IMG/VR virus record: IMGVR_UViG_3300018080_000098
Coordinates: 285,794 to 349,793 of that record
Strand: one strand, 5' to 3'
DNA length: 64,000 nucleotides
Both the position numbers and the translations under genes were made by a program. This document shows positions 8,920 to 47,995 of the stretch, piece after piece (position 1 is the first letter of the stretch; each line of letters begins with the position of its first letter). The notes beneath the pieces were generated by a model. The model was given only the letters and a program-made list of their open reading frames with translations, was not told where the DNA came from and did not search any database.

Positions 8920-10278
8920 ATGCTGGGAACGATCCGAGTACGTCTCACCTCCGTGCTAGAGCGGGCACGTATCCTTTCAAAGATCCAAGATTTAGCAAGA
9001 GTTTTGGCACGTTACGTATGCCGACTCATAGGAGCGCGAATATTCAGGCACGAGATCCGGGGGATACTTTCAGAGTATGACAATGCTCAGAAAGAGGTCC
9101 TTGATCTGAAGGAAGACCTGGACAATTCGGTACGGAAGAACCGGTTGTTCAGGGCTATACACGAGCTAGCTGGAACGGTATTTTCCTCGCCTTCTGAAGT
9201 AGTTAGCACAGCAACTCGATATGGTGTAGATGGGGATGACGTGTGGTTTCTTTACGCAGCGTTATCAGAGGATGATGTTAGTGAGATAGCGTCGTTTGTT
9301 CTATCGGAGAGCGACTACTCGGACGAAGAAGTTCTACAAATATTGAAGGATACGTCGTACTTGGCGCGGCGTTTAGTACATCGGAAGTTGTGGTTTATTT
9401 TGGCTCACGATCCGATGTTTGAGAGTGCGGAGGATCTGGTTGGGGAGCTGCATGTAGCGGTGTTGCGAGTGATCCGGGAGTACGAGGTACAGTGCACAAC
9501 AAGTGCGCACATGACAGCTAGGGTAGCGAAGTCTGTGAAGAACGAAGCTATCAATCTGGTGGAAAAGCATGGACGGGAGAAACGTCGGGTGGTGGGGCGT
9601 GTACGGGAAAGTCGAGCTCAGCGGGTGTTGTACCATTTGGATGTGCAGAGTGGGGTGGTAACGGAGGTGGAGGTATTTGCGCATCGGGAGCTTCGGCAGG
9701 TACGGGGTGGAAACGTATTGGTAGCGGTGCGAAATTTGACAACGCGTGAGTGGATGGTGGTGCACCACAAGCGGCTGTACGAATCGATGGAGGAGGCGGA
9801 ACACGCGCGTTCTTTGCGGCTAGCTGGTAGGCGCAGCAAGCGGGCACGGTACGCAGACCTGGCTCCTCAGGACATTGACGACTTCCAGCTGAACGTGTTA
9901 TCTATCGATGTGATGGACGAACGTCAAGGAGCTCGTCCTTTCGCGGAGACGTGTGCAGCGGAGGAGCGTACGTGGAAGCTGGACGACGGGCAGCGGCGGG
10001 AAGACATTCTGAAGAGCATCAGTCCGCGCAGCCGTCCATTCGTGGAGCTCGTGTTCGAGTCTGCGGTGGACGAGCTTTTCGACGCGTGGTGTGAGGACCA
10101 CGGGTACAATACGGCTACCTTCGACCTGGCGAAAATGGGCCGCGTAGCATGTCGGTACTTACGTGTGACGAAGCAGCAGCTGCGGAAAGACCTAGCCGAT
10201 ACTCCGGCTGCACTGTGGAGCGATCAGCAGATTGACTTGATTCTAGACCACACTTCTGGTACAACGGTTGACAACTAA
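8920..10278 (+). CDS. Sigma-factor-like protein (region 2-like segment)
   Basis: AEDLVGELHVAVLRVIREYE...VAKSVKNEAINLVEKH resembles sigma region 2; C-terminal helical segment may be an HTH. Start moved to ATG 8920. Confidence 0.5.
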   Translation: MLGTIRVRLTSVLERARILSKIQDLARVLARYVCRLIGARIFRHEIRGILSEYDNAQKEVLDLKEDLDNSVRKNRLFRAIHELAGTVFSSPSEVVSTATRYGVDGDDVWFLYAALSEDDVSEIASFVLSESDYSDEEVLQILKDTSYLARRLVHRKLWFILAHDPMFESAEDLVGELHVAVLRVIREYEVQCTTSAHMTARVAKSVKNEAINLVEKHGREKRRVVGRVRESRAQRVLYHLDVQSGVVTEVEVFAHRELRQVRGGNVLVAVRNLTTREWMVVHHKRLYESMEEAEHARSLRLAGRRSKRARYADLAPQDIDDFQLNVLSIDVMDERQGARPFAETCAAEERTWKLDDGQRREDILKSISPRSRPFVELVFESAVDELFDAWCEDHGYNTATFDLAKMGRVACRYLRVTKQQLRKDLADTPAALWSDQQIDLILDHTSGTTVDN

Positions 10279-11179
10279 AGCACCGAGAATTCACCGACGC
10301 CTTTGCGAATGGTGTAACAGATTCTACAGCGGCCCTACGGGTACACGGTGCACCTGTGGAAGCATGGGACGGATTTTTACCCGCCCTTTCGGCTCAGCTA
10401 AACGGGACAGACTTATGGATCACATACCTTTCAACCACACCTTTTTCCACATCGCTACGGTGACTCCTAATTGGGAACCCTACGACCCGAACGACCCAGG
10501 TTTTCCTCACCCCGTGCACCATCAACCTATAGGTGCTAGCCTTCTTCGCTTGACCAAGGAGAAGGACGAAGATGGGGAAGCCCAAGTTGCGGTCACCATC
10601 ACCTCGAAGGTCATCAAGAACCTCGAGCAGGAGGAGCGAGGTCTGGTAGCTGCCTTCTTCGAGAAAGTACCAGGGGAAACCTCCTTCCTGGTGTCGTTCA
10701 ACGGGCGCTCCTTCGCCCTTCCTGTGATGGTCTACCGAGCTCTGAGGCACGGTGTGAACGCGTCCAAGTACCTCCAGGAACAGGAAGTGTTCACCGCGCG
10801 CTACTCGTCGCAACACGTCGACTTGGCGGACTTCCTCTCGGGCTACGGAACACTCGCCCAAGATGGGGCGTCTCTATCCCTCTACGCGCAGATGCTCGGG
10901 CTTGCCAAGCGCCCCTACCTCAAGGTAGAGGAAGCCTTCCAGAAGGGTCAAACAGACGCCATTAAGGAACGTTTGGAGGTGGACGTCCTGATTATGGCAG
11001 CCATCTTCTTCCGGCTCCTACTTTCACAAGGGCGCCTTACTCTGGATAGCTTTCGAGCTGTATCCAAACTCACTCTGCGTAAATATTTCGATCAGAACGA
11101 TCTGGCTGCCAAGTACCTCGAAGACTCAAACATTACTGAGTACTTCCGAGGTGGCGTACCAGCTGAGAAGAAAAAATGA
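10268..11179 (+). CDS. PolB-type 3'-5' exonuclease-like protein (DNA_pol_B_exo2-like), likely inactive, with N-terminal Cys cluster
   Basis: LVSFNGRSFALPVMVYRALRHGV and RYSSQHVDLADFLSGYG match the family as I recall it; acidic Exo I/II residues are replaced. Confidence 0.7.
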   Translation: MTTKAPRIHRRLCEWCNRFYSGPTGTRCTCGSMGRIFTRPFGSAKRDRLMDHIPFNHTFFHIATVTPNWEPYDPNDPGFPHPVHHQPIGASLLRLTKEKDEDGEAQVAVTITSKVIKNLEQEERGLVAAFFEKVPGETSFLVSFNGRSFALPVMVYRALRHGVNASKYLQEQEVFTARYSSQHVDLADFLSGYGTLAQDGASLSLYAQMLGLAKRPYLKVEEAFQKGQTDAIKERLEVDVLIMAAIFFRLLLSQGRLTLDSFRAVSKLTLRKYFDQNDLAAKYLEDSNITEYFRGGVPAEKKK

Positions 11180-12019: not shown

Positions 12020-13414
12020 TTAGTTGAGATCTGACGAAGAGGGTGCGGAATTCCAGAGGGGTCTCCAGCCTGCCAGTTTTTGCTTCAGCATTTCTTCCTG
12101 AATATGATTCAGGCTCATTGTGAGTGCTTCGTGGAGCTCGGAGCGTCCTGTTGCGAAGGGCGCGGTGACGTCGTCCGTTTCCATGCTTTCCACCACTTCG
12201 AGGGACTCCTCGACGTAGCGTTTGGCGACTACCAGGTTGCCGTATCGATTCATGAGTACGGACATGTTGCTCAGCGCTGCCACGAGGCTGGATTTGTGTT
12301 GGTCGGATTGCTCTGCGAGTTTTCTGCTTCGTGTGATGGCACGTCGGAATGTTTCTTGCGCTTCTACAAGGTTGCCTTGCACGCCGTGTACGATACCCAG
12401 CTCGTTCATGTAATTGGTGTGTTGGTCCTGAAAGTAGGTGTTCAGAGGGACCTTATCCATTGCTACTGAGCACCACTTCATTGCGTAGTGGAAGTTTTCG
12501 CGGGCGTCGTCCCACGATTCCGCTACACTGTAAAGCTCTGCTTTCTTGTGGAAGGCTACGCTGGCAAGGAAGGCACCTTTGGCGGTGATTTTTCTTTTGG
12601 GGATGGTAGTGACCCGATGGATTGCTTCCTCCACCATTTGGATGCACTTTCTGTGTTTATCTCTCATCATGAGTACCTCGGCGTAACCGAGGAGCGCTGC
12701 TACGTGGTCAATTGAGTTAAGCTTGTGGCTTTTTACTAGTGTTGAATAGAGTTCGTCAGCCAGCCCAACAGCTGCTCCTACTCGTGGCTCATCTTCATCA
12801 TCGTGGAATATTCGTGCTAGTAGCCACGCACTAGGTGCAGCTCTTTTAGTGATTCGCAGTTCCACGTAATCAGGGTCGTCGGTTTCGTACGTCTTTTTGA
12901 ATGCTTCTACACCAGCGGCCACATCCAGGATGGAGATAAGGTTGTGTTGTGCAAACTTGTATTCCTTCATCGTGTTCAGTGCGAGAGCAATATGGAACAG
13001 GAAATCCAGGCCAGCCTCTACGTAATGGAAGGGTGCGTTATCTATGTCTGTATGTTTTTTCAATATTTGGAAGGCTCCTCCCAGCAGCGCGAGGGATGCC
13101 ATTGGGTCTTCATAGACCATCCCATAGCATTCCTTTTCTAGGAAGAGCTGTTTGATGAACAAAGAGTATTGTAGCTCATCCTCTTCACGAAGTCCTTCCG
13201 GCGGGTAGTTCGTGAATATGTAAAGGAGGTCGCTTGTTTGTTTGGACTGGCGCATCCCGGTTGAGATCTCTTCGAACTCGTTGAGTGTAGCTATCGCTAC
13301 TGAGACGTATTCCGCGTTGTAACCTTTGGGAAGGTTATCCCGCAGACCTACCAGGATAGAATGTACAAGGCGTGCGTTTGGCATTGGTGTTTGCATAACA
13401 GCAGTTATACTCAT
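12020..13414 (-). CDS. TPR-like alpha-helical repeat protein
   Basis: C-terminal helical repeats such as MNELGIVHGVQGNLVEAQETFRRA and LSNMSVLMNRYGNLVVAKRYVEESL. Confidence 0.7.
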   Translation of the reverse strand: MSITAVMQTPMPNARLVHSILVGLRDNLPKGYNAEYVSVAIATLNEFEEISTGMRQSKQTSDLLYIFTNYPPEGLREEDELQYSLFIKQLFLEKECYGMVYEDPMASLALLGGAFQILKKHTDIDNAPFHYVEAGLDFLFHIALALNTMKEYKFAQHNLISILDVAAGVEAFKKTYETDDPDYVELRITKRAAPSAWLLARIFHDDEDEPRVGAAVGLADELYSTLVKSHKLNSIDHVAALLGYAEVLMMRDKHRKCIQMVEEAIHRVTTIPKRKITAKGAFLASVAFHKKAELYSVAESWDDARENFHYAMKWCSVAMDKVPLNTYFQDQHTNYMNELGIVHGVQGNLVEAQETFRRAITRSRKLAEQSDQHKSSLVAALSNMSVLMNRYGNLVVAKRYVEESLEVVESMETDDVTAPFATGRSELHEALTMSLNHIQEEMLKQKLAGWRPLWNSAPSSSDLN

Positions 13415-18026: not shown

Positions 18027-18323
18027 CTAACTACTCTGCGAGTCTTCTTCTATTTTACAGTTTGACCTTCGGAAGTAGAGTTCGAGCACGGTGCCGACCG
18101 CGGCCACCGCGAGCACCGTAAAAAACCAACCTTCGGGGACAAACCAGGGATTGGTCGGGGTGAGCTTCGCGCACACCGCGAGAAACAGGAGGAACGCGAG
18201 GAGAACTCCGGCAGCGTACGCGGTAATGGCAACGCAAAGAAATCGAAGAACCGCTATCAAGGATAACAATCCATAGGGCAGATGGCGTAGACTTCCAGAC
18301 CGTCGCAGATACCGTTGCCGCAA
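18027..18323 (-). CDS. Small multi-TM membrane protein (start uncertain)
   Basis: Three hydrophobic segments; overlaps end of upstream gene. Confidence 0.45.
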   Translation of the reverse strand: MRQRYLRRSGSLRHLPYGLLSLIAVLRFLCVAITAYAAGVLLAFLLFLAVCAKLTPTNPWFVPEGWFFTVLAVAAVGTVLELYFRRSNCKIEEDSQSS

Positions 18324-19741
18324 GTAGAGAGGCAGTCAGGCGGACAATTGTTCATCGTTTCTCCCATATCGCACGAACCGTCACCGCAATTCTGAGCACA
18401 ATCGAGGCTACAGTTGCTATACGCTTCCCCATAACCAACTGCACAGATACCATCACCGCAGCTTCCGGGGCAATCCTGCTGGCAGGTCACCCAGGTTTCT
18501 GCGCCATCGCAAAGATTGTTTCCGCAGACACCAGCACCGCAATCAGCTGGGCAGCTACCCGCGTCCTCTCCATGAATAGCCAGGCACAATCCGTCACCGC
18601 AACTGGTGCCACAATCCATAGGACAGCTAATAGGGCCTTCGCTGCCTTCGCAAGTGCCGTTGCCGCAGACGTTGGGGGGACAGTCGAAGGAGCAGTTTAG
18701 AGAATTCTCCCCGAGAGAGATCTCGCAGGTACCGTTGCCACACAGCCCGGGTCCGCAATCCTGTGGGCAGCTTTGTACATCCTCAGTGGGTTCGCACAAG
18801 CTGTTACCGCAAACGTAGGTGGTTGGGCAGTCCTGCGGGCACGATATGGCGTTGTCGGCAAAGTTGGGATCGCAGACACCGTCACCGCAGATGGGCCACG
18901 TACAGTCTTCTCGGCACGCATCCGGTGTGGTGTCGCTATTGAAGACGCCGTTGTCGCACGCCTCGCCAGTTTCTTGAATGCCGTTACCGCAGACGGGGCT
19001 AGTGGGCTCGGTTTCGCAGACGGCGTTACAACCGTCCCCGTCGACGGTGTTTCCGTCGTCGCACTCTTCCCCAGTGTCCTGGACGCCGTCGCCACAGTAG
19101 GCCACCAAGCAATTCAGCCGACAAGCGTCGGGCTCGGTATCGGAGTTGTCGACTCCGTCGTCGCACTCTTCACCCGGTTCTTGAACTCCGTTACCGCAGA
19201 AGGGGTCGGTAGGTTCGGTTTCGCAGATGGAGCTACACCCGTCCCCGTCGACGGTGTTACCGTCGTCGCACTCTTCCCCGGTATCTTGGACACCGTCCCC
19301 GCAGAAGGGGACCTCGCAATCGAGGCGACATGCGTCGGGTTGCGAGTTGGAGTTGCTGGAGCCGTCGTCGCAGGCTTCCCCGACCTCTTGGATACCGTTG
19401 CCGCAGACGGGGTCCGCCTCCGTTTCGCAGGTACCGGAGCAACCGTCTCCGCTGGTGCTGTTGCCGTCGTCGCACTCTTCTCCGGTGTCCTGCACACCGT
19501 CTCCGCAGTAGAAGACGGTGCAGTCGAGGCGACACGCGTCCGGTTCCGTATCGGAGTTAGCCGCGCCGTCGTCGCACTCCTCGCCCCAGTTCTGAACTCC
19601 GTCCCCGCACTCTCCTGGGTTGTCGTTCTGGTTTATGTTGTTGGCGTTGGTGCCAGCGTCGTTACCGTTCGTGAAGGTGTCTCCACTCGTACCACAGGCA
19701 GCCAGCATCAGTACCATTAGCAGTGCAAAAATTCGTTCCAT
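18257..19741 (-). CDS. Myxobacterial-type cysteine-rich repeat lipoprotein (DUF4215/myxo_disulf_rpt-like)
   Basis: Start moved to ATG 19741 (GGAGG RBS); lipobox LAA/C; repeated CGDGVQDTGEECDDGN...DGC and CGNGxC...E...SCPxDC units. Confidence 0.85.
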   Translation of the reverse strand: MERIFALLMVLMLAACGTSGDTFTNGNDAGTNANNINQNDNPGECGDGVQNWGEECDDGAANSDTEPDACRLDCTVFYCGDGVQDTGEECDDGNSTSGDGCSGTCETEADPVCGNGIQEVGEACDDGSSNSNSQPDACRLDCEVPFCGDGVQDTGEECDDGNTVDGDGCSSICETEPTDPFCGNGVQEPGEECDDGVDNSDTEPDACRLNCLVAYCGDGVQDTGEECDDGNTVDGDGCNAVCETEPTSPVCGNGIQETGEACDNGVFNSDTTPDACREDCTWPICGDGVCDPNFADNAISCPQDCPTTYVCGNSLCEPTEDVQSCPQDCGPGLCGNGTCEISLGENSLNCSFDCPPNVCGNGTCEGSEGPISCPMDCGTSCGDGLCLAIHGEDAGSCPADCGAGVCGNNLCDGAETWVTCQQDCPGSCGDGICAVGYGEAYSNCSLDCAQNCGDGSCDMGETMNNCPPDCLSTCGNGICDGLEVYAICPMDCYP

Positions 19742-19797
19742 GGTAAAATCCTCCCAAAAAATCAATGTCCCCAGTATTGACGATGTCAAGAAAGATG

Positions 19798-20292
19798 TCA
19801 AGAAAATTGTGGTGAGGTTGCACGAGTAATGAGCCAAAGAAGCATATACACTTCCTCGCTTCTATCGAGTTCCACGGAGAATTGTTTCTTGTTGTCAGCG
19901 TACGCACCGAAAACGCGCTCATCCGGAAAACCCTCGAAGTATACACCATGAATGGATTCTTCCGCATATTTCCCGAAAAGATCGTGAAAATCCACGTCGA
20001 TTTCCACTGGTGAGTCAACCGACACTTTGTAGTCGTGAAAATTGTCGCGAATAGTGAAAACGACCCCTCCTGGGGTACGTAGTTCCACGACGGGTAGTCT
20101 AATAGACTTAGAAGTGTGGGTGCTGATTACTATAGGCTTCAGTGTCTTATACACCTTATAATCTGCGCCTGGGGGACAAACTGCCCACGTCAAACGGTGG
20201 AAGAAGTCGAATTGCACGTGTGCAGCTTTCTTCCACACCATTTCATCTGCAGGAACATTCTCCTTGCACCACTCTTCGAGCGTAATGGTCAT
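19798..20292 (-). CDS. Hypothetical phage protein
   Basis: Start moved to ATG 20292 (MTITLEEW); GGAGG RBS supplied by the pentamer tract. Confidence 0.7.
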   Translation of the reverse strand: MTITLEEWCKENVPADEMVWKKAAHVQFDFFHRLTWAVCPPGADYKVYKTLKPIVISTHTSKSIRLPVVELRTPGGVVFTIRDNFHDYKVSVDSPVEIDVDFHDLFGKYAEESIHGVYFEGFPDERVFGAYADNKKQFSVELDRSEEVYMLLWLITRATSPQFS

Positions 20293-21076: not shown

Positions 21077-21286
21077 CTAATCAATGCTTCTACTTCGCTG
21101 CCACGCGAAACAGCCCTCCGCGCCCACGCACCCCAGCCACAACACCCACACCCACCAGGGCAGCACAAACAATGCCAGGTAATCGTTGAACGCTACCGCT
21201 AACGCTACCAGGAAGAGCACCGGTCCCATTCCTAGCACGGCGACAGTAACGGTAAACACCCTAAATATTTTTATCAAGAAGGTCAC
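21077..21286 (-). CDS. Small membrane protein
   Basis: 69 aa, almost entirely hydrophobic. Confidence 0.55.
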   Translation of the reverse strand: MTFLIKIFRVFTVTVAVLGMGPVLFLVALAVAFNDYLALFVLPWWVWVLWLGCVGAEGCFAWQRSRSID

Positions 21287-22067
21287 CTGATGCCCAGAAA
21301 CCTGCGTCCTTCAAGATAGCTTCACACTCCTGCCGATAGCCCTTCTTGAGCTCGATTACGTTCACACCCGGGTGGCGCATCAACCACAAACCGAACACGG
21401 AATTGGTAGCCACAATAAACTGCACTTTCCCAGAGCACCCCTCACGCTGCACCCACTGCCACAACGGGAGTTTGGTAGGCCAGTCCAGAACAGCGTCAGG
21501 CTCGTCGAGAAGAACTGTTGGAGGCCCCTTTTCAATAACAGGCTCGAGCAGCTCTTGCGCCATCTTGATTCTGTGCGCCCATACGTCGTTCACGTTGTTC
21601 GGGGTAATTCTCCAATTGATGCTTTCTTCCTGCGAGCGCTGTACTAGACGCATAAAGCGTCCTGCAACCTGCTGCCCTGCAGATCCCTTGTCGGTTGCAT
21701 TTATGACACCCTCCATCCCAAAATCCCAATCGAATCCACCTCCCACTAGCCCCACTTGTACAGAAGGGTCAAAGTACATCACAGACTTTCCATCAGACTT
21801 GATGGACATGTTCTTCCTGGGGGTATTTCGGAAACCGAACCCAAAGAGCTCATCAATTGACTGCTGGGTAACTGTAGAAGTTCCTCCCTGTTCGCAGTGC
21901 GTGATCCGCGCCAGCGCTTTTATTACCGTGGACTTCCCCGACCCATTCGGGCCCCAGAGCACGTTGACACACGGCTCAAAGTTGAACGTACGCCGTTTAG
22001 GGAACGGTTTCGACCACCACGTAATGGGTGGCTTGTCTCGATTTATTACCTTCAGCTGCTCGATCAT
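21261..22067 (-). CDS. ABC/SMC-like ATPase (AAA_21-like)
   Basis: Walker A GPNGSGKS, degenerate signature SAGQQ, Walker B LLDEPD. Confidence 0.8.
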   Translation of the reverse strand: MIEQLKVINRDKPPITWWSKPFPKRRTFNFEPCVNVLWGPNGSGKSTVIKALARITHCEQGGTSTVTQQSIDELFGFGFRNTPRKNMSIKSDGKSVMYFDPSVQVGLVGGGFDWDFGMEGVINATDKGSAGQQVAGRFMRLVQRSQEESINWRITPNNVNDVWAHRIKMAQELLEPVIEKGPPTVLLDEPDAVLDWPTKLPLWQWVQREGCSGKVQFIVATNSVFGLWLMRHPGVNVIELKKGYRQECEAILKDAGFWASGDLLDKNI

Positions 22068-25306: not shown

Positions 25307-25864
25307 CTAGTGATTGCTGATCCGCTTGTGGGGAAGGTTCTGGAAAACGTTTCCGTGCTCGAGTGTTGTGGACACGTCACCATCGTTGTCACTGTACGCG
25401 AACCGAAGGATAACCTTTCCTTCATTCTCCTCCAAAAATTTTCGCGCAGCTTCTTCTTGATTTGCATAGATTTCTTTTTCTTCTTCCTCGCGCGCTTTGT
25501 CCCTTTCGGGACCTTTTTCTTTGTACTTCTCCCAATAGTGCTTTCTGTACTGCCTACTGGTGTAGCACCCTGGTATTCCGGGGATCTCCTTTTCGATGTA
25601 GAACATGTCCCAGTACACGAGGTTGTGCAGATCGTCCGCGATGGTCTCGAGAGAGTAGGGAAGCTTGTGCAGCTGCGCTTGTATGTCATTCCACACGACT
25701 TGCGCGAGTGTTTTCGTGGGGACTGGGTCACCGTAAACATCCAGCTCTTGTGTGTCTCCAAACAGAAGCTCCTGCAGGGCGTCAGCACTTTCAGGGATCT
25801 CGTCGAACGCCACAATGAAAGAGGAGCTCGAGCTGTTACTCACGAATCCGTTACGAATTTTCAT
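25307..25864 (-). CDS. MKIRxGFVSNSSSSSF-motif protein 1
   Basis: Start moved to ATG 25864 (AGGAGG RBS); begins MKIRNGFVSNSSSSSF. Confidence 0.8.
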   Translation of the reverse strand: MKIRNGFVSNSSSSSFIVAFDEIPESADALQELLFGDTQELDVYGDPVPTKTLAQVVWNDIQAQLHKLPYSLETIADDLHNLVYWDMFYIEKEIPGIPGCYTSRQYRKHYWEKYKEKGPERDKAREEEEKEIYANQEEAARKFLEENEGKVILRFAYSDNDGDVSTTLEHGNVFQNLPHKRISNH

Positions 25865-26216
25865 TTTGGTCCTCCTTCTTTTTCGGCACCCAAAAGATTC
25901 CCACCCGCTCATACTCCACCCCTTCAGCTTCCTCTTTCGCGCGTTTCTCTGCACGCTTCTGTGCTCGTTTCGCAGCTTCTGCTTTAAGCTTTGCCGTTGT
26001 CTCTTGCGTGGCTTCCATCATACGCGCTGTAGCGTCTGTGAGTTTCTCTTCGTCGAGCGACATGAGGATGATCTGAATAATCTCGTCACGGCCTAGAACC
26101 TCTTCATTCGCTAAAGGTTCACAGCACCTAGGGCATCCGTAGGCCGCACCTGCATCTTTCGCTCTCTTTTTGAGCTCCTCGTCAGCGAACGCTTCGATAA
26201 GCTCAGGCCGCGTCAT
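25851..26216 (-). CDS. Hypothetical protein with CxxC and coiled coil
   Basis: Start moved to ATG 26216 (MTRPEL). Confidence 0.6.
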   Translation of the reverse strand: MTRPELIEAFADEELKKRAKDAGAAYGCPRCCEPLANEEVLGRDEIIQIILMSLDEEKLTDATARMMEATQETTAKLKAEAAKRAQKRAEKRAKEEAEGVEYERVGIFWVPKKKEDQNENS

Positions 26217-26288
26217 CGCTGGCTGCTCCTTGTTAGAAAGGCAGCGTCCGCACAATTTCAGAGGGAAAAAGTCAAACATAGAAACCTC

Positions 26289-26684
26289 CTAACCCATCCT
26301 CGTTCCCACGAACAGCTTGATGGGAGCTTCCTCTTTCGACAAGCCCAATCTCTCCCGAGCTTCCCCGGCCGACGCCAGCAGTTCTACCACATCGAACTCA
26401 TACTGGTCTGGAGGACTCGTGTCACTCCAACCAGCTACCTCGACACCAACCAAGTCTTTGCCGGGAGGAGCTCCGTTCTCCTCGTGATCACATACTGTGT
26501 ACTTCCCGTTGTGCATCAAGTCGTGGAACTCGTCCTCCCCCTCTTCAATGGAGTTCCAGGTGTGCACGTCGTAGAGGTGCTGTAGGTAATACTGCCACGA
26601 GAACTTCTCACGGGGTACCGTGAAGCCCATGATGACGAAGCTGCTGGTAGAACTGTTGCTTACGAAACCTGTGCGGATTTTCAT
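26289..26684 (-). CDS. MKIRxGFVSNSS-motif protein 2
   Basis: Begins MKIRTGFVSNSSTSSF. Confidence 0.8.
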   Translation of the reverse strand: MKIRTGFVSNSSTSSFVIMGFTVPREKFSWQYYLQHLYDVHTWNSIEEGEDEFHDLMHNGKYTVCDHEENGAPPGKDLVGVEVAGWSDTSPPDQYEFDVVELLASAGEARERLGLSKEEAPIKLFVGTRMG

Positions 26685-26685
26685 C

Positions 26686-27234
26686 TTATGACTCCATGAC
26701 TACCACGAAGGGTAGGTGCTCGAGAAAATCGAAGTTGTTGAACATCTCCTGCTCCACGGGACCACATCCGGAACCGTAGCCCAGCAGGTAGACTTCTTTC
26801 GTGTCGTGGGGAGGGAAGCAGCGCATCGAGGCACCGTAGCTTCTAGCTTTCTCTACCATTAATTCGATGACCGCTTTGCCAAACGCTGCTGGATCCTGCT
26901 CCTCCAGATCGAACAGCTTCTCCTGTTCTTCCTTGGGAACGTTCATGGTTTGGAGTGCGTCCTCCACATCGCGGATATAGTACCGCTCTCGGCACATAAA
27001 CACAAGCCTACTAATAACGTCATCAATCTGACGCTGCTCCTGAATATCCTTCCATAGCTGCTCCGCTAACATGCGTGCAGTGATGGTGTCCTCTTCATCA
27101 TCCCAAGCTCGGGACTCGTAGCCTTCTGGGAAAAAGATTTCCTCCACATCCTCTACCGACTCCGGGCGCGATGGAAGAATGACCACGAAGCTCGAGGAAC
27201 TCGAATTGCTAACGAAACCGGTGCGGATTTTCAT
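26686..27234 (-). CDS. MKIRxGFVSNSS-motif protein 3
   Basis: Begins MKIRTGFVSNSSSSSF. Confidence 0.8.
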   Translation of the reverse strand: MKIRTGFVSNSSSSSFVVILPSRPESVEDVEEIFFPEGYESRAWDDEEDTITARMLAEQLWKDIQEQRQIDDVISRLVFMCRERYYIRDVEDALQTMNVPKEEQEKLFDLEEQDPAAFGKAVIELMVEKARSYGASMRCFPPHDTKEVYLLGYGSGCGPVEQEMFNNFDFLEHLPFVVVMES

Positions 27235-27551
27235 AGCTCACCCCACTCGTGCCAGGTGGCGTAGTTGTCGTCGACTTCCACGTGGTCCAGCGATACGCCG
27301 ATCGCTTCCAGGAAAGCTTCCATGTCGATGTTGTCCATGATGGTGCTACCCTCGACTGTAGTGTCCGTTTCGTGGATCGCCCACTCATCACTGTCCCGAG
27401 GTTTGTAGCGCTGCCCGTATTTCGCGGGGTCTTTTTTGATTTTGTGCAGGTGGCTCTTGATGAGCTTGATTTGGGCAGGGCTTATCCACTCCTTCTGAAT
27501 TACGAAGGATGAGCTCGAGCTATTGCTCACGAAGCCTACTCGGACTTTCAT
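27231..27551 (-). CDS. MKIRxGFVSNSS-motif protein 4
   Basis: Begins MKVRVGFVSNSSSSSF. Confidence 0.8.
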   Translation of the reverse strand: MKVRVGFVSNSSSSSFVIQKEWISPAQIKLIKSHLHKIKKDPAKYGQRYKPRDSDEWAIHETDTTVEGSTIMDNIDMEAFLEAIGVSLDHVEVDDNYATWHEWGEL

Positions 27552-27560
27552 CGTCTGCTC

Positions 27561-27914
27561 CTACCAATACATCTGTAACCCTGCCGCCTCGTCACCAGCG
27601 GCCAGTATTTTCTTTTTGACTTCTTCCCAAGCGTCGTAAATTTTGTCGTGCAAGTCGTCGTCGAATGCGCACTCGTCGGGGAAGTCTGCATGATCCATCG
27701 CCATCTCTACCCACGACATTCCACCATCACCGTAAGTGGCGAACGCCATGAAAGTACGCCCAAGAAGTTTGATGTTCCCCTGCTCAAAGAAGTCCGCGAT
27801 AGCATCCTCCAACGGAGTTAGCGTCGGCTTTACCTTCTCCCATGTTTCCGTTGTTGCAAGCAACAGGAAGCTTGCAGAGCTCGAGTTGCTAACGAAACCT
27901 GTGCGGATTTTCAT
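27561..27914 (-). CDS. MKIRxGFVSNSS-motif protein 5
   Basis: Start moved to ATG 27914; begins MKIRTGFVSNSSSASF. Confidence 0.8.
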   Translation of the reverse strand: MKIRTGFVSNSSSASFLLLATTETWEKVKPTLTPLEDAIADFFEQGNIKLLGRTFMAFATYGDGGMSWVEMAMDHADFPDECAFDDDLHDKIYDAWEEVKKKILAAGDEAAGLQMYW

Positions 27915-27928
27915 GCCCGTCTCCTTTA

Positions 27929-28279
27929 CTACCAATCGTCTCCGTTGGTAGTCACCAGGTCTGGATTCTCCATCAGCTTATGCGCCGTGTCCGACCACGC
28001 TCTGTGGACGTCCGTACCGAAACGTTCAGAAGGAGGGCCATCGTAGTTATGCGTATCCTCTTCCTCCATCCACGTGGACCAACTCGTAGAGTGGCTACTC
28101 CACGTAGAGAAGGACACGATGTCGATACCGCAGAAGTTGTCCTTTTGCATGATGGCTTCCGCTACCGCGATTTGAAAAGGTTCGAGCCCTCTTTTCACCT
28201 TCTCCCAGTTCTCCGCTGTCGTCGTGAGAACGAAAGAGGAAGAGCTCGAGTTGCTAACGAAACCAGTGCGAATTTTCAT
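27929..28279 (-). CDS. MKIRxGFVSNSS-motif protein 6
   Basis: Begins MKIRTGFVSNSSSSSF. Confidence 0.8.
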   Translation of the reverse strand: MKIRTGFVSNSSSSSFVLTTTAENWEKVKRGLEPFQIAVAEAIMQKDNFCGIDIVSFSTWSSHSTSWSTWMEEEDTHNYDGPPSERFGTDVHRAWSDTAHKLMENPDLVTTNGDDW

Positions 28280-28357: not shown

Positions 28358-29152
28358 CTAAAACTCAAAGGTGGCCCCTTTCCCTACGAAGCCCCAAAAG
28401 CCTGCTTCTACAGCTTTTTCTTGCCACTCTTCCCATTCTTTAATGATGTTGTCATGATAATGAACGAGCCTCATTTTTCCCTTCGTATCCGAATTGAGCT
28501 CACAGAGCTCCTCAAAGTGGGCGTGTACCCCCGATTTAAAGGGAAGTGTTTCTACATCATGAAAAATGATTGCTGCTTCGTTGTAGAAGTCGCGGATCTG
28601 GTTGGGCGCATGCTGGGTATCTGTCGTCAGAAAAACTTTTTCATCTGTGGAAGCTCTGAACATGAGTCCGAAAGATGGCTCAAATGTGAACGCATTCACA
28701 AAATGGATCATTTGTATGAGGCGGAAGTTTGGGCAGCTGGCTTCGGAGGGGATCACGAAAGATTGGTTGCGCTCGATAACATGGACATCGAAGTACGTAT
28801 CGAGCGTGGCGCGTTTCACTTGGAGGGAAGCGAGTCCAGCACTCAGACCGCGTTCCCATAGGGCGTCCACCATGAACTCAGAGATGAACATGTCGGGACG
28901 CCCTTTGTACCGGGGGTCGAAGTAGGAGGAAAACGCCAAGTATTCCAGGCCACCGATGTGGTCCGCATGCAGATGCGAAATGTACACTCCGTTGATGTCT
29001 AGGTAACTAAGTCCTTGAGCTGCGAGGGAGAAACGTATGTCACCACCGCAGTCGATGAGGAGCTTGTAGCCACGGTCGAATTCGATGAGTGCGTTCGTCT
29101 GGAAGTTTTCCAGAGTAAAAGCGTTGCCGGTTCCGAGCCAGGTAATTTTCAT
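28358..29152 (-). CDS. MBL-fold metallo-hydrolase, Apyc1-like cyclic-nucleotide phosphodiesterase
   Basis: GTGNAF, LLIDCG, HLHADHIGGLE (HxHxDH), TTDT, FHD...GVHA, HYHDN; start moved to ATG 29152. Confidence 0.8.
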   Translation of the reverse strand: MKITWLGTGNAFTLENFQTNALIEFDRGYKLLIDCGGDIRFSLAAQGLSYLDINGVYISHLHADHIGGLEYLAFSSYFDPRYKGRPDMFISEFMVDALWERGLSAGLASLQVKRATLDTYFDVHVIERNQSFVIPSEASCPNFRLIQMIHFVNAFTFEPSFGLMFRASTDEKVFLTTDTQHAPNQIRDFYNEAAIIFHDVETLPFKSGVHAHFEELCELNSDTKGKMRLVHYHDNIIKEWEEWQEKAVEAGFWGFVGKGATFEF

Positions 29153-29472
29153 GGTACACTCCATGTTCTTTTGGGTTCGTCTGTAGGAACCTCGAACGGT
29201 GAAAAACCGTACTCTTCTTCAAACACGTACCATACCATCCCGAAGGTCCAGGTACGAAAAATGCTGTCCCGCATACGCTTGCAAGACATACACGTCTTCG
29301 CTTCAAACCACGACCCATCGCAGCAACCCTTTACGTGCTCGTAGTGCTCACCGGGACAAATGAGCTCCCAACACTCTCCGCAGCGGTGCTTTTTGCGCGC
29401 CTTGCGGATGGTGATTGTACACGGGTCGACAGGTTCCGCGTCGTAACCACCGTCTATGCAGCTCTCGTACAC
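29149..29472 (-). CDS. Cys-rich phage protein
   Basis: RKARKKHRCGEC...CMSC. Confidence 0.65.
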   Translation of the reverse strand: MYESCIDGGYDAEPVDPCTITIRKARKKHRCGECWELICPGEHYEHVKGCCDGSWFEAKTCMSCKRMRDSIFRTWTFGMVWYVFEEEYGFSPFEVPTDEPKRTWSVP

Positions 29473-30904: not shown

Positions 30905-32026
30905 TCAATAAATGTCGAACTCCGGACACTGCCGACAACCCGACACCAAACACTTCTTACCCTTCGCCGTTGCCAGGAGCTCCTCGCGCCACTTCACCGT
31001 CCGCGGATGATACCACACGTCCCGCAGAAAGTCCTCTGCCTCGATCACGTCGATACCCTCGAAGCCGCTTTCTTCGAGGAAAGAACAGGGAAACATACGA
31101 CCTCTTACATCCACGTAAACCGAGAACAGCGTGGACTCGCAGGGCTCTGCCAACATCTCGTACTGTTCGTAGTTTTCCGAATCCTCCACCGACTTGAGAA
31201 ATAGGGGTGCGGAGCAGCTGTCGAAGCCGATGCCAACACCCTTGTCCATGGCTGTCTGCACGAGCTTCTGGTACTTAGCAGCGCTTCGGAGTGGTGTAAA
31301 GGACTTACCACGCCCAGCGGGTTTGAGGGCGAGGAAGACGATGGCCCTGAGCCCCTTCAGACGCGGGTCGTTCTTGGCGTCCTCGAGGAGCTCGAAGCAA
31401 GAGTCGTACGTTTCCTCGCAGAGCAGCTGGTGAATGTTGACCTGCTCGAGACCAGCTTTCGACAGTTGCTCTACGGCGTCGTAGCACACGTCCTTCGGGT
31501 CGTACCGGGACACCGCGACCGCGCCACACAGGTTCGCCAGCGCAGCGTACTTGTCGTCGTCCATCCGCGCGCCGTTGATGGTCACGTTTGGGATGACGCC
31601 GTTTTCTCGGCAGTGGCTGAAGATGGCCCACAGGTCGGGGTTGGCGTCGATGGAGCCGATGCCAAAGGCGATCTGAGTTAGTGGTTTTGGGAGTTTCTCG
31701 AAGACCTTTTTGAAGGTTTCGAGGGACATGTTTTCCCCAGTTGGGCGGTTGGACTTGTAGCAGAATTTGCACGGGGTCCCAGTGATGCCGTCACAGACAG
31801 TGGACAGCTCGATATCTGCGAGCTCGGGGCCCCAGGGTGCCATTTCCGGGTCATCCTTTTTGGTGGCCCCCCACCGAGCGAAGAAACCATCGTCCTTCCG
31901 AAAAATGTAGTTGTAGTTTTCGGACGCGAGGGCTTTCAGGTGTGAAGACTCTTGGATTCTACAAGTGGGAATGCTTTCTAGGAAGGCCAAGCGGTTTTCA
32001 AACGTGGGGTCTGATTTTGTGGTCAT
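30905..32026 (-). CDS. Radical SAM enzyme with SPASM/twitch-like C-terminus
   Basis: CX7CX2C motif (CDGITGTPCKFC), PNVTING, C-terminal CES...FPCSF...CLVSGCRQC. Confidence 0.85.
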   Translation of the reverse strand: MTTKSDPTFENRLAFLESIPTCRIQESSHLKALASENYNYIFRKDDGFFARWGATKKDDPEMAPWGPELADIELSTVCDGITGTPCKFCYKSNRPTGENMSLETFKKVFEKLPKPLTQIAFGIGSIDANPDLWAIFSHCRENGVIPNVTINGARMDDDKYAALANLCGAVAVSRYDPKDVCYDAVEQLSKAGLEQVNIHQLLCEETYDSCFELLEDAKNDPRLKGLRAIVFLALKPAGRGKSFTPLRSAAKYQKLVQTAMDKGVGIGFDSCSAPLFLKSVEDSENYEQYEMLAEPCESTLFSVYVDVRGRMFPCSFLEESGFEGIDVIEAEDFLRDVWYHPRTVKWREELLATAKGKKCLVSGCRQCPEFDIY

Positions 32027-32159: not shown

Positions 32160-32783
32160 TCAGCCATCCAGCTGCGGAATCAGGAAGCTCACGAAGCACA
32201 CGCCGACGAGAACAGTACCGAATTTGTCGTCCACGACGAGGTCTTTGATGTGGTACTGCTGGTTGGCCATGAAATAGTGCTTGTTGCCTACGATGTGGCT
32301 AGACTGACTAGCCGGTCCGTAGCGACGCTCGAACAGACCGTTCATCGACTGGGTGAGCATCTTCCGAGCCTTCTCCGTAGAGCCACACCCTTCGTACTCA
32401 CAGGCGAAGCCGCCCACAAGTTCGTCAGAACGCTCTTCAGCAGGAAATGTCTTGTACACATCAAACGTGGCCACCCCCGCACAGAGGTGCTGCCCTTCTT
32501 CGCCGTTCATCTGGGCCATAATGCACTCGAGCACCATCCCGTGGTGCATGAGGCCCTGCTCCTGTGCGTCCTGGAGGGTGATCTGCTCCGCTTCCTTCGG
32601 AATCACACTCGTGTATTTTACGATGTTGCAGTTCTCGATGCCACCCTCGAGCAACGCGATGTCGTAGTCGGTCGTCTCCCACGGATCCGACCCGGGGCCG
32701 AAGTTGCTCTGCCCGGCGCCCGCGACGACGATGTATTTCTCGGGAATGCAGCTGGCTGTTCGGATCAGCTTGTGCTCACTCAT
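32160..32783 (-). CDS. pdaD: Pyruvoyl-dependent arginine decarboxylase
   Basis: ALLEGGIENCNIVKYTSVIP with Thr-Ser self-cleavage site as in chlamydial AaxB; G..LECIMA and GFACEY motifs. Confidence 0.8.
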   Translation of the reverse strand: MSEHKLIRTASCIPEKYIVVAGAGQSNFGPGSDPWETTDYDIALLEGGIENCNIVKYTSVIPKEAEQITLQDAQEQGLMHHGMVLECIMAQMNGEEGQHLCAGVATFDVYKTFPAEERSDELVGGFACEYEGCGSTEKARKMLTQSMNGLFERRYGPASQSSHIVGNKHYFMANQQYHIKDLVVDDKFGTVLVGVCFVSFLIPQLDG

Positions 32784-33366
32784 TCTCGTCTCCTATAATT
32801 CTCGGATTCCCGACAGCGTAGCCATGCTTGTCGTACTCCGTGGGCCAACGTTGCAGCGCGAGTATCTGAACTCGCTTCTCATTGGTAATTTTGAGAGCGT
32901 GCTGCTCATCTCTGGCTAGCACACCATTCAATACCATGAACTCTGTGCTGTTTAAGCGCTCCTCTACTTCCTTGCTTTCACCGTTGGCCCAAAAGCGTTT
33001 GTGCGAGGACTTCCAACCTTTGGAGTCGGGGACGGGCGGACCGTAAAAGGAAACTTTATTTCTGGCTTTGAGAGCGTCTGCGAGTGATTTGCGACGGACC
33101 GCGGAAGTCTCACCATCCTTCGACATAAAGACATAGAAGCCGTACTTATCTTTTGGCACCTCCGGGAAGGCTGCGTCAACTTCCCAAGTTTCGACACGGT
33201 AATCCGGAGTGTACCGGTAGCTACCATCCTCGTTACAAACGTTTTCACCGTCTTCCTTTTCGGTGTTGTGGAGTTTGCAGAACTCGTGTGCTTTTTCTTT
33301 GGTGGAGAACATGGCGGCGATTCCGTAGTCAGAATACTCACCACATGTTACTACATATACTTCCAT
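32776..33366 (-). CDS. Hypothetical phage protein
   Basis: MEVYVVTCGEYSDYGIAAMFSTKEKA; follows tract T9. Confidence 0.7.
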   Translation of the reverse strand: MEVYVVTCGEYSDYGIAAMFSTKEKAHEFCKLHNTEKEDGENVCNEDGSYRYTPDYRVETWEVDAAFPEVPKDKYGFYVFMSKDGETSAVRRKSLADALKARNKVSFYGPPVPDSKGWKSSHKRFWANGESKEVEERLNSTEFMVLNGVLARDEQHALKITNEKRVQILALQRWPTEYDKHGYAVGNPRIIGDENE

Positions 33367-38831: not shown

Positions 38832-39041
38832 TTACTCGCCATCATCTTCCTCCCGGGCACGTCTAGCGAGCGCCCGCTTCAACATCCGCTCACCGCACTT
38901 TCTAGCTGCACCTCTACTCCTGTGGGCGTGTCGACACGTGGCCACCACTTTCCCGTCATCGTCGAGGACAACAGGATAACAGTACTTGGGCATCTCGTGT
39001 ACTTTAATCTTCATCACCACAACCCCGATCGCGCGCAACAA
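38832..39041 (-). CDS. Hypothetical protein
   Basis: CRHAH motif; overlaps upstream stop. Confidence 0.5.
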   Translation of the reverse strand: MLRAIGVVVMKIKVHEMPKYCYPVVLDDDGKVVATCRHAHRSRGAARKCGERMLKRALARRAREEDDGE

Positions 39042-40680
39042 GCTCAGCGAGCTCCTTCTTCAAGGCATCCCGCTCAGCCTCCACGCCCTTACGGTACTCG
39101 ATAGCCATTTCCATGCTCTCGTACAGAATAGCCTGGAACTCCTCGCGCGCCTCATCCAGCCTGGCGGCGTACTCTCCCTGCAGACGCGCAGCCACCGCCC
39201 CAGCAGCACAGGATGGACAGGGGTGCCGTACCTCGTTCCCCGAAAACCCGGTGCCCTGGCATTCCATGCAGCAACCCGTTTGCTCAGGAACACCGCGGAC
39301 GGGGAAACGATACCACTCCATCCCGCTTCGCCCATCCATCTCTGCCTGGTGGTGATCTGGTGGAGCGAAAGCTACGGCTCCAAGGGCTGGGGTTTTTCCG
39401 TTGGCTCGCGTTGGCAGCCTAACCCAAACCTCCCCCTGGTCTGCGATCGGCTTTTCCAGCTCTTTGTCCCGGGCTTTCCGCTCCTCCATTTCTGCCTTCA
39501 GCGCGTCCCTCGTGCTGCGAAGCTCGTTGACGCGAGCCAGAAGTGCCTCGCTCATCGGCAGGGACAACCGACACATGGCTGAGCTTAATTCCCCCTGTCC
39601 GCTCTCAAGGCGCTTTCGCATCAGTCCTACCGTTTCAATTATGTCTGCGATGTTAAATGTACTCATGTCTTCACATTCCTCCACCCCCTCCCTCTGCGGC
39701 GGGGCAGACCGGACTGCACAATGAATAAACCAGTCCATCCTGGGGATATCCCAATTAACGCACCCACACGGCGGGGGACCCGCTCCACACAGAGTTGGCC
39801 AACAGCCCCCGCACACGGGACAGAGCGGCGTTTTTTCGGGTAGGCGAATCGGTGCCTTTTCCCACGACTCCATTTCCAGGAGGCGGGTGTGTAGCGCATT
39901 CCGCTGCGCTTTCCAGTTCTGCTCCACCTTTTTGGCGTGGGCTTCAGCGGCTTCGGCGCGGGCTAGGGTTATCTGGAGTTGGTTACAAACCTCCACAATG
40001 TCATAGCCCAGATCGGCAGCCTGTTTGCATCCCTCACACTCCTGCGGTTTCTCGGCGCCGGTTACCTTAATCGGCCCCCACAGGTTGACAGTATTCAGGT
40101 CTTCTTTTGTTGTTCCGGCAACGAATGGGCCATTCTTGGTATCTCTGCCAATCCAAACAGTGGGTGGGGCCTGCTCACGTTCCCTTTCTCCTTGAAGTAG
40201 GGCTCCGTGAATAGGCACGCGGTAGAGATATAATCCGCAGTGGTCACCGTTGGGGTACTCGCTCCACACGCGCATGTTGTCGCAGTGATCGTGCTCTCCG
40301 TCGTCGCCATCTGGCAGGATGTGCTCGTTGCACTCTGGCGGCAACCCCACCCATACCTCCCCAACCCCCTGCGCCTCGGGTTCGCTAACACGCGGGGCTC
40401 CGTGAACGGGGACGCGTTTGTATTTCTGGACAGGTTCTGCCCACACGTCCAGCCAAACCGGGACAGTCTCCCCGTGGTGCTTGATGGTAAACAGCGTCCC
40501 GTTCCCTCGCTCTGATTCGTCACCGAACACGTGCACCCAAACATCCGAGGCGGTCTCCGTCTCCAATTCCTCTATCCTGTCCAGCGCGGCGCGGGTTATG
40601 GAAAGGAGCTCTATGTAGCACTCGCGGATATCCATCTTGGCCAACTTGTCCATCCGCTCTCTCAATTTCTTAGTGTCCAT
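39004..40680 (-). CDS. Mosaic hypothetical protein with internal repeats and coiled coils
   Basis: 558 aa; GEVWVGLP/GEVWVRLP and three RVPxHG-like segments; CxxC pairs. Confidence 0.7.
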   Translation of the reverse strand: MDTKKLRERMDKLAKMDIRECYIELLSITRAALDRIEELETETASDVWVHVFGDESERGNGTLFTIKHHGETVPVWLDVWAEPVQKYKRVPVHGAPRVSEPEAQGVGEVWVGLPPECNEHILPDGDDGEHDHCDNMRVWSEYPNGDHCGLYLYRVPIHGALLQGEREREQAPPTVWIGRDTKNGPFVAGTTKEDLNTVNLWGPIKVTGAEKPQECEGCKQAADLGYDIVEVCNQLQITLARAEAAEAHAKKVEQNWKAQRNALHTRLLEMESWEKAPIRLPEKTPLCPVCGGCWPTLCGAGPPPCGCVNWDIPRMDWFIHCAVRSAPPQREGVEECEDMSTFNIADIIETVGLMRKRLESGQGELSSAMCRLSLPMSEALLARVNELRSTRDALKAEMEERKARDKELEKPIADQGEVWVRLPTRANGKTPALGAVAFAPPDHHQAEMDGRSGMEWYRFPVRGVPEQTGCCMECQGTGFSGNEVRHPCPSCAAGAVAARLQGEYAARLDEAREEFQAILYESMEMAIEYRKGVEAERDALKKELAELVARDRGCGDED

Positions 40681-47795: not shown

Positions 47796-47922
47796 GTGTG
47801 TGACTCCGTGTGCGTTGTCCGTCCGACAAAAACAAGATAACCATGCAGCTTGACGGCGTCAAGTTTTTCCGCAAAATATTTTTGCGCGCCTGGTAGGGTT
47901 GTCGGTTTAACCAATAGACCAG

Positions 47923-47995
47923 GGTGCATGACGGAACTCGAATCCGCAACCTCCGGGACCACAACCCGGCGCTCTACCGATTGAGCTACATGCAC
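47923..47995 (-). tRNA. trnH: tRNA-His (GTG)
   Basis: Cloverleaf: acceptor GTGCATG/CATGCAC, anticodon arm CCGGG-TTGTGGT-CCCGG, T loop TTCGAGT; discriminator C; CCA and G-1 not encoded. Confidence 0.85.

What the first reader, a model, noticed from the sequence alone, without database searches (positions are those of the whole stretch)
28358..29152. Apyc1-like anti-defence phosphodiesterase
Seen: full MBL metal-binding set (HLHADH, H, D, H) and family-like motifs GTGNAF, GYKLLIDCG, HADHIGGLE, LWERGL..GL, FHD...GVHA...EL, HY.DN. Established: Apyc1 proteins are phage MBL-fold enzymes that degrade the cCMP/cUMP signals of Pycsar defence. Inference: this phage carries anti-Pycsar or broader anti-cyclic-nucleotide activity.
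Basis: partly seen in the sequence, partly recalled or inferred. Interest (0 to 1): 0.6.

Follow-up and report, generated by a model that had tools for sequence, protein, structure and literature searches.

The report
Apyc1-family cyclic-nucleotide phosphodiesterase in jumbo phage

Summary

The host genome is a complete 349.8-kb jumbo phage. The protein is only 31-35% identical to the tested Bacillus-phage enzymes and belongs to a large sister clade (61 viral contigs, at least 348 bacterial species). Broad cNMP hydrolysis is therefore likely. A specific anti-Pycsar role in this unknown host is inferred and not shown. Verdict: new member of a known kind, modest interest.

The parts
28358..29152 (-). 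Apyc1-family MBL-fold phosphodiesterase gene (264 aa plus stop)
   Evidence: ORF. PF23023 79.8 bits against cutoff 50. Top PDB matches are Apyc1 7u2r, 7t28 and 7u2s. AF2 model pLDDT 96.1.
29159..29162 (-). GGAG Shine-Dalgarno-like element 6 nt upstream of the ATG at 29152
   Evidence: Read directly from the sequence.
28958..28975 (-). HxHxDH metal-binding motif (H60, H62, D64, H65)
   Evidence: Invariant in 141 of 141 aligned homologs and outgroups and in A1. This is the di-zinc site of Apyc1 (Hobbs 2022, PMC9117128).
28943..28945 (-). E70, equivalent of SBSphiJ Apyc1 E74 (catalytic residue supplied in trans)
   Evidence: Aligned with E74 and invariant. In the dimer model E70 touches residue 63 of the other protomer.
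28790..28858 (-). W99-F121 segment holding the Apyc1-specific trans loop
28703..28705 (-). H150 (MBL motif III metal ligand)
   Evidence: Invariant in A1. H in 138 of 141 rows.
28619..28621 (-). D178 (MBL motif IV bridging ligand)
   Evidence: Invariant in 141 of 141 rows.
28523..28525 (-). H210 in GVHAH (conserved active-site histidine)
   Evidence: Invariant in 141 of 141 rows.
28460..28462 (-). H231 in HYHDN (MBL motif V metal ligand)
   Evidence: Invariant in A1 and A2.
29149..29472 (-). Upstream Cys-rich 107-aa ORF, translationally coupled (ATGA overlap) to the phosphodiesterase gene
   Evidence: PHROG 7314, unknown function. Conserved only in the closest relatives L004 and L005.

Best explanation
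The gene encodes a homodimeric, two-metal, MBL-fold class II phosphodiesterase of the Apyc1 family. By analogy with assayed members, it hydrolyses 3',5'-cyclic mononucleotides (cCMP, cUMP, cAMP, cGMP) to 5'-NMPs with relaxed base specificity. Each active site is built from the HxHxDH/H/D/H metal centre of one protomer and completed by E70 and the 100-113 loop of the other. Expressed by a 349.8-kb jumbo phage, it would remove host cyclic-mononucleotide signals during infection. Pycsar cCMP/cUMP signals are the known defence target, so downstream abortive-infection effectors would stay inactive. Shown here: family membership, an intact catalytic apparatus, a fold near-identical to Apyc1, a predicted dimer with trans contacts, a phage origin, and distinctness from RNase Z. 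Inferred: actual substrate range, and the in vivo counter-defence role in an unknown host.
Against: Identity to any assayed Apyc1 is only 27-35%. SBSphiJ Y112, reported as a second trans catalytic residue, has no equivalent here and falls at a gap or S109. However, it is also absent from the two Paenibacillus Apyc1 crystal-structure proteins (Q and N at that position; alignments). No member of this exact clade is individually reported as active in the text I could read. Some family members are weak or inactive (Tesson 2024). More than 80% of Apyc1 genes are in non-mobile bacterial DNA, so family membership alone does not imply counter-defence. The host, and whether it has Pycsar, are unknown. 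The neighbours give no functional support: nearly all are proteins of unknown function.
Confidence: 0.7

Rival explanations
1. It is a purine-preferring or general housekeeping-type cNMP phosphodiesterase. The phage would use it to reprogram host cAMP/cGMP signalling (for example catabolite control, motility or development) rather than to evade a defence system.
For: The same clade is widespread as a single-copy chromosomal gene in Legionella, Chlamydiae, cyanobacteria, Planctomycetes and others: at least 348 species, with one copy per genome in 5 of 5 tested. Tesson 2024 argues that the ancestral role is regulation of cNMP signalling. Pycsar is rare. The phage has no cyclase of its own.
Against: Sequence and fold are much closer to the relaxed-specificity Apyc1 enzymes than to the purine-preferring YhfI. 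The Apyc1-specific loop that distinguishes Apyc1 from YhfI is present at normal length. Bacterial Apyc1 homologs with intact loops cleaved all four cNMPs. This rival changes the biological purpose, not the chemistry, and both roles could hold.
Confidence: 0.2
2. It is an RNase Z-type tRNA 3'-processing endonuclease serving the phage's own tRNA genes.
For: The phage encodes about 16 tRNAs, none with an encoded 3' CCA, and no CCA-adding enzyme. This is the only MBL gene in the genome. Homologs are often auto-annotated 'ribonuclease Z/BN'.
Confidence: 0.04
3. It is a weakly active or inactive family member, like Staphylococcus phage Madawaska or the C. bescii homolog, or it acts on some other phosphodiester as part of a module with the nearby radical-SAM/SPASM and pyruvoyl arginine decarboxylase genes.
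For: Some PF23023-like proteins showed weak or no cNMP cleavage. A radical-SAM gene lies upstream in the window, in L004/L005 and in the distant L102.
Against: The inactive homologs have aberrant loops. The Machias proxy also has extra insertions (39 and 32 residues against 31 and 20 in two segments) and lacks the W/GG loop signature. The window protein has canonical spacing and strong purifying conservation of the loop (W99, L103, G105/G106, S109, F121). Neighbour conservation is limited to close relatives plus L102, out of about 60 viral loci.
Confidence: 0.06

Closest known systems
Apyc1 of Bacillus phages SBSphiJ and Bsp38, and of Paenibacillus sp. J14 and P. xerothermodurans (PDB 7T28, 7U2R, 7U2S; Hobbs et al. 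2022)
   Same: MBL fold with near-identical architecture (rmsd 1.6-2.1 A). HxHxDH plus H/D/H metal ligands. The trans glutamate (E74/E70). A trans loop of similar length. A predicted homodimer. Size (264 aa against 245-257 aa). [quoted passage not shown]
   Different: Only 27-35% identity. It lies in a separate sister clade in the tree. SBSphiJ Y112 is not conserved. There is a C-terminal extension of about 7 residues. The host is not a Bacillus-type Firmicute as far as can be judged: GC is about 54% and there is no similarity to cultured phages. No biochemical data exist.
Bacterial chromosomal Apyc1 homologs (Tesson et al. 2024: Legionella, Synechocystis, Thalassospira, Cohnella and others)
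   Same: The same PF23023 family. The window protein is 40-52% identical to Legionella, cyanobacterial, Chlamydiae and Planctomycete genes, with identical loop length (21 residues between anchors).
   Different: Those are single-copy genes in non-mobile DNA, thought to regulate housekeeping cNMPs. This one is phage-borne and sits in a phage-only subclade.
B. subtilis YhfI / B. anthracis BA1088 (class II PDE, cAMP/cGMP-preferring)
   Same: The same MBL class II phosphodiesterase fold, dimer and metal site.
RNase Z / ELAC1 / RNase BN
   Same: MBL fold, the HxHxDH motif and a homodimer. It is a frequent automatic annotation for this family.
   Different: RNase Z has a flexible tRNA-binding arm of about 45 residues and lacks the trans loop. 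The window protein fails all the RNase Z equivalog models.

Membership tests
Apyc1 (Pfam PF23023, anti-Pycsar cNMP phosphodiesterase) | Scores above the curated family model cutoff | tested here: met
   79.8 bits against a cutoff of 50, E 2.9e-22; 80.1 bits in the six-frame genome search. 0 of 14 control genomes exceed the cutoff.
Apyc1 (Pfam PF23023, anti-Pycsar cNMP phosphodiesterase) | MBL fold closest to solved Apyc1 structures | tested here: met
Apyc1 (Pfam PF23023, anti-Pycsar cNMP phosphodiesterase) | HxHxDH motif and the remaining ligands for two metal ions | tested here: met
   H60, H62, D64, H65, H150, D178 and H231 are present and invariant.
Apyc1 (Pfam PF23023, anti-Pycsar cNMP phosphodiesterase) | Catalytic glutamate supplied by the opposing protomer (SBSphiJ E74) | tested here: met
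   E70 aligns with E74 and is invariant. It contacts residue 63 of the partner in the dimer model.
Apyc1 (Pfam PF23023, anti-Pycsar cNMP phosphodiesterase) | Tyrosine supplied by the opposing protomer (SBSphiJ Y112) | tested here: not met
   It aligns to a gap or S109. It is also absent from the Paenibacillus Apyc1 structures 7u2r (Q) and 7u2s (N), so it is specific to the SBSphiJ lineage and does not define the family.
Apyc1 (Pfam PF23023, anti-Pycsar cNMP phosphodiesterase) | Intact Apyc1-specific nucleotide-binding loop of normal length (shortened or lengthened loops go with weak or no activity, Tesson 2024) | tested here: met
Apyc1 (Pfam PF23023, anti-Pycsar cNMP phosphodiesterase) | Homodimer | tested here: met
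   The model supports binding: ipSAE 0.77 against 0.00 for the best of 3 controls. In calibration the mark was reached by 20 of 30 solved homodimers and 1 of 23 monomers. This is a prediction only, and the pass may reflect similarity to solved Apyc1 dimers.
Apyc1 (Pfam PF23023, anti-Pycsar cNMP phosphodiesterase) | Hydrolysis of cCMP/cUMP as well as cAMP/cGMP (relaxed base specificity) | not testable with these tools
   Needs an enzyme assay.
Apyc1 (Pfam PF23023, anti-Pycsar cNMP phosphodiesterase) | Protects a phage from Pycsar defence in vivo | not testable with these tools
   Needs a plaque assay with a Pycsar operon. The host of this phage is unknown.
RNase Z (TIGR02651 / NF000801) | Scores above the equivalog model cutoff over the full length | tested here: not met
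   46.6 bits against 292.95 and 49.8 against 252, with only residues 1-75 matched.
RNase Z (TIGR02651 / NF000801) | Flexible arm (exosite) for tRNA binding between motifs III and IV | tested here: not met
YhfI-type cAMP/cGMP-preferring class II PDE (NF041851) | Scores above the family model cutoff | tested here: not met
   NF041851 scores 14.9 bits against a cutoff of 400. phmmer to 6kns gives E 5.9e-4.

The most novel reading that the evidence does not exclude
The gene marks a counter-defence island of a previously undescribed type in jumbo phages. In this reading, an Apyc1-clade phosphodiesterase is recurrently followed by tandem arrays (2-10 copies) of proteins that share an invariant 16-residue N-terminus (MKIRTGFVSNSSSSSF) fused to unrelated C-terminal domains. 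The constant head would act as a shared targeting, packaging or docking tag for a diversifying set of anti-defence effectors. Separately, the basal position of phage lineages in the 130-member clade leaves open that this branch of the family diversified in phages and passed to bacteria rather than the reverse.
Probability: 0.12. Interest if true: 0.6.

Novelty: new member of a known kind. Interest (0 to 1): 0.3.

Why it matters
If confirmed biochemically, this gene would extend assayed Apyc1 activity from Bacillus-type myoviruses to a large, mostly uncultured clade of jumbo phages. It would also support the view that degrading cyclic mononucleotide signals is a general phage strategy. As it stands, the gene would be flagged by existing tools (the Pfam PF23023 model; AntiDefenseFinder probably). 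Similar calls have already been published for phage G and other environmental phages. The result is therefore a solid annotation and not a discovery. The practical lesson is that the 'ribonuclease Z/BN' labels on many homologs are wrong.

Tried and rejected
**RNase Z identity.** Rejected on model scores, the missing exosite arm, co-occurrence with genuine RNase Z, the tree and fold Z.

**Functional linkage to neighbours.** tblastn of 11 neighbouring proteins against about 150 related loci found them only in the closest relatives L004 and L005. The one exception is a radical-SAM homolog, plus two paralog-family genes, in L102. No general operon partner emerges.

**Phage-encoded cNMP signalling.** There is no class III cyclase in the genome.

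**Phage tRNA maturation kit.** There is no CCA-adding enzyme and no second MBL gene.

**Environment and expression.** I did not pursue this by other means, and read laying was not used.

**Linking the clade to the Legionella sp. MW5194 and Synechocystis homologs assayed by Tesson et al.** The paper's text does not give their individual results, and no supplements are held. Their activity is inferred only by elimination.

**Function of the MKIRTGFVSNSSSSSF family.** Pfam gives nothing. PHROG 7397 is of unknown function. The Atlas returns only viral hypothetical clusters. The AF2 model (pLDDT 76) has no PDB match at E <= 0.001.

**Host identification.** Not achieved. The large structural ORFs have no PHROG hit, and the phage collection holds no relative closer than 35% for this protein.

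Full report
**1. Observation**

The window holds an ORF at 28358-29164 on the minus strand (268 aa). That start is the better one for three reasons:
- Its ATG overlaps the TGA of the upstream ORF 29149-29472 in an ATGA arrangement.
- A GGAG lies 6 nt upstream.
- All homologs begin MK(I/L)T.LGTG.

**2. Genome context**

The window is bases 285794-349793 of a 349,793-bp virus record with direct terminal repeats, estimated 100% complete. It is a jumbo phage.
- Its large structural-size ORFs have no PHROG match.
- No cultured phage carries a relative of this protein above 35% identity.
- The gene lies in a long minus-strand block, with no promoter-like or terminator-like signal setting it apart.
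- Upstream are a small Cys-rich ORF (PHROG 7314), a 469-aa unknown, a radical-SAM/SPASM protein (PHROG 7293), a pyruvoyl-dependent arginine decarboxylase (PF01862) and a DUF7336 protein.
- Downstream are six tandem paralogs of unknown function (see section 8).

**3. Family assignment**

- *Family models.* Pfam's curated Apyc1 model PF23023 matches residues 2-236 at 79.8 bits (cutoff 50, E 2.9e-22); the general MBL models score lower. PHROG 392 says 'metal-dependent hydrolase'. NCBIfam RNase Z equivalogs reach only 46-50 bits against cutoffs of 250-293 and align only the first 75 residues or so. The YhfI-type model NF041851 reaches 14.9 bits against 400.
- *Solved structures by sequence.* The three Apyc1 entries lead: 7u2r 1.3e-26, 7t28 7.7e-26, 7u2s 2.2e-21. 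BA1088, YhfI and ELAC follow at E 3e-5 to 1e-3.
- *Specificity of the model.* PF23023 exceeds its cutoff in none of 14 control genomes, including B. subtilis with its YhfI and RNase Z.

**4. Structure**

An AlphaFold2 model built from a 50-sequence alignment has mean pLDDT 96.1 and pTM 0.92.
- *Foldseek.* The Apyc1 chains rank first (E 6.7e-24 to 4.7e-21, TM 0.84-0.92, rmsd 2.0-3.5 A). The next tier (a Brucella nucleotide-bound MBL, MBLBt2, BA1088, YhfI, RNase Z, PhnP, PqqB) starts at E about 1e-14 with 13-20% identity.

**5. Defining residues**

Hobbs et al. 2022 (PMC9117128) describe Apyc1 as follows:
- a homodimeric class II phosphodiesterase with an HxHxDH di-zinc site;
- an Apyc1-specific extended loop that enters the nucleotide pocket;
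- two further catalytic residues, E74 and Y112 (SBSphiJ numbering), supplied by the opposing protomer.

Tesson et al. 2024 (PMC11724313) add that homologs with shortened or lengthened loops cleave cNMPs weakly or not at all.

What I found here:
- *Metal site and active-site residues.* H60, H62, D64, H65, H150, D178 and H231 are all present, as are D199 and H210. All are invariant in the subfamily.
- *E74.* It aligns with the invariant E70.
- *Y112.* It has no equivalent here (gap or S109). It is also Q or N in the two Paenibacillus Apyc1 crystal-structure proteins, so it is not a family-wide feature.
- *Loop length.* The W99-F121 segment, which contains the Y112 position, has 21 residues between anchors. 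SBSphiJ has 23, Bsp38 22, P. J14 20 and P. xerothermodurans 21. Of the 141 aligned homologs, 120 share this length. Genuine RNase Z has 5.
- *Loop conservation.* The loop is under clear constraint in the clade: W99, L103, G105/G106, S109 and F121.
- *Dimer.* A homodimer prediction supports binding. The ipSAE is 0.77 against 0.00 for the best of 3 controls. In the tool's calibration the mark was reached by 20 of 30 proteins solved as homodimers and 1 of 23 solved as monomers. Runs agree in at least 90% of contacts and pLDDT is 90. The interface comprises residues 61-63, 66-71, 97-113, 151-153 and 207-209. It includes contacts of residue 63 with E70' and of 61-62 with 105'-106'. This is the trans-completed active site described for Apyc1. 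Solved Apyc1 dimers exist, so this pass shows likeness and not proof.

**6. The RNase Z rival**

The rival has surface appeal. The phage encodes about 16 tRNAs, none with an encoded CCA. It has no CCA-adding enzyme. This is its only MBL gene. Many homologs carry automatic 'ribonuclease Z/BN' labels.

It fails on every direct test:
- The equivalog models are not met.
- The tRNA-binding flexible arm of about 45 residues is absent. The motif III to motif IV spacing is 27 residues here and 23 in SBSphiJ, against 69-73 in genuine RNase Z.
- Of five bacterial genomes carrying a close homolog, each has exactly one PF23023 gene. Two of them (Oscillatoria and a Parachlamydiaceae MAG) also have a genuine RNase Z at 376 and 297 bits.

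**7. Distribution and phylogeny**

The word-indexed protein search found 2143 relatives at E < 1e-5. All of the listed ones carry PF23023, and the nearest is 78% identical.
- *Bacteria.* Relatives at 40-52% identity occur in at least 348 species genomes. These include Legionella, Coxiellaceae, Parachlamydiaceae, many cyanobacteria, Phycisphaerae, Desulfovibrio and Patescibacteria.
- *Viruses.* Relatives occur on 61 IMG/VR contigs, many of 200-466 kb.
- *Tree.* The assayed Bacillus-phage clade (SBSphiJ, Bsp38, Mater) is a starred clade (99). It is sister to a 130-row clade (support 94) that contains the window protein. The window protein forms a phage-only subclade with L005 and L088 (98). Phage lineages dominate the poorly resolved base of the large clade, and the bacterial sequences are nested deeper. 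The search was 'quick', many forks are unsupported, and the root rests on three long outgroup branches. I therefore draw no conclusion about the direction of transfer.
- *Link to assayed homologs.* Tesson et al. assayed a Legionella and a Synechocystis homolog. Each Legionella and cyanobacterial genome I tested has only one PF23023 gene, so those proteins probably belong to this clade. By elimination they were among the active ones. The paper's text does not state this individually and no supplements were available, so I count it as inference.

**8. Neighbourhood**

The window's neighbours are conserved only in its closest relatives, L004 and L005 (75% identical enzyme).

One association recurs. 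A family of small proteins shares an invariant N-terminus, MKIRTGFVSNSSSSSF, and has unrelated C-terminal parts.
- It stands in tandem just downstream of the enzyme gene: six copies here, and nowhere else in the 349.8-kb genome.
- There are ten copies in L004.
- There are two copies about 600 bp downstream of the enzyme gene in L102, a 359.6-kb contig whose enzyme is only 46% identical. L102 also has a radical-SAM homolog upstream.
- The family has no Pfam match and only PHROG 7397 (unknown function). It has few relatives, a moderate AF2 model whose conserved head is of low confidence, and no PDB fold match.

Hobbs et al. noted that SBSphiJ apyc1 also sits beside a run of small unknown genes. 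This is suggestive of a variable counter-defence locus but is untested.

**9. Conclusion**

The protein is an intact Apyc1-family class II phosphodiesterase in a jumbo phage. It most likely hydrolyses cyclic mononucleotides with relaxed specificity, through a trans-completed di-metal site.

An anti-Pycsar role, as opposed to manipulation of host cAMP/cGMP, cannot be decided without an assay and a host. Pycsar is rare, and Apyc1-bearing phages can infect hosts that lack it. Comparable annotations already exist for phage G (gp388, also among my hits; PMC12484599) and for other environmental phages. The finding is a new member of a known kind and of modest interest.

Noticed in passing
window 25307-28279, minus strand (27929-28279, 27561-27935, 27231-27551, 26686-27234, 26289-26684, 25307-25864); also L004 8802-12905 and L102 about 9370-10300: A tandem array of six paralogs sharing an invariant N-terminus MKIRTGFVSNSSSSSF, with unrelated C-terminal parts. 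The array is found nowhere else in the 349.8-kb genome. There are ten copies in relative L004 and two just downstream of the MBL gene in the distant jumbo contig L102. No known family, fold or function. The conserved head is modelled with low confidence.
   Followed up: partly
window 30905-32026 (-) and 32160-32783 (-), 32776-33366 (-): A radical-SAM/SPASM protein (PHROG 7293, E 6e-100), a pyruvoyl-dependent arginine decarboxylase (PF01862, E 4e-24) and a DUF7336 protein lie upstream of the phosphodiesterase gene. The arrangement is conserved in L004 and L005. In those relatives the decarboxylase domain is part of a 460-aa protein with a weak helicase-C hit. This may be a polyamine or modification module.
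   Followed up: no
window 29149-29472 (-): A 107-aa Cys-rich ORF (CGEC...C..C...C..C; PHROGs 7314 and 28814, unknown function), translationally coupled by an ATGA overlap to the phosphodiesterase gene. It is conserved in L004 and L005 only.
   Followed up: partly
whole genome G000 (C1:183381-259226 and window 47922-48084): About 16 credible tRNA genes (four Leu isoacceptors and two Met among them) plus two odd ARAGORN calls. None encodes a 3' CCA, and the phage has no CCA-adding enzyme (PF01743).
   Followed up: partly
window 68-11179 (+), 12020-13414 (-), 18257-19837 (-), 39004-40680 (-): Ten large ORFs (375-606 aa), probably structural or replication genes, have no PHROG match at E <= 0.001. 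The phage lineage is very distant from cultured phages.
   Followed up: no
L006 (Candidatus Moduliflexus flocculans DF820460.1, 259894-274688): A bacterial homolog (52% identity) sits among Macro-domain, Cupin_5 and ThiS genes, a HigB/HTH toxin-antitoxin pair and a transposase. This looks like a variable region rather than a housekeeping operon.
   Followed up: no
phage records, 47 and homologs: Many homologs are auto-annotated as 'ribonuclease Z' or 'ribonuclease BN' (for example phages 000TH008, Goe20/24/25 and PBS1, and numerous JGI entries). For the PF23023 members these labels are very probably wrong.
   Followed up: partly
window 21261-22067 (-): A 268-aa protein with an N-terminal SMC/AAA_23/ABC-type P-loop (E about 1e-7), followed by a 269-aa unknown. 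Possibly a phage SbcC/Rad50-like or OLD-family ATPase fragment.
   Followed up: no
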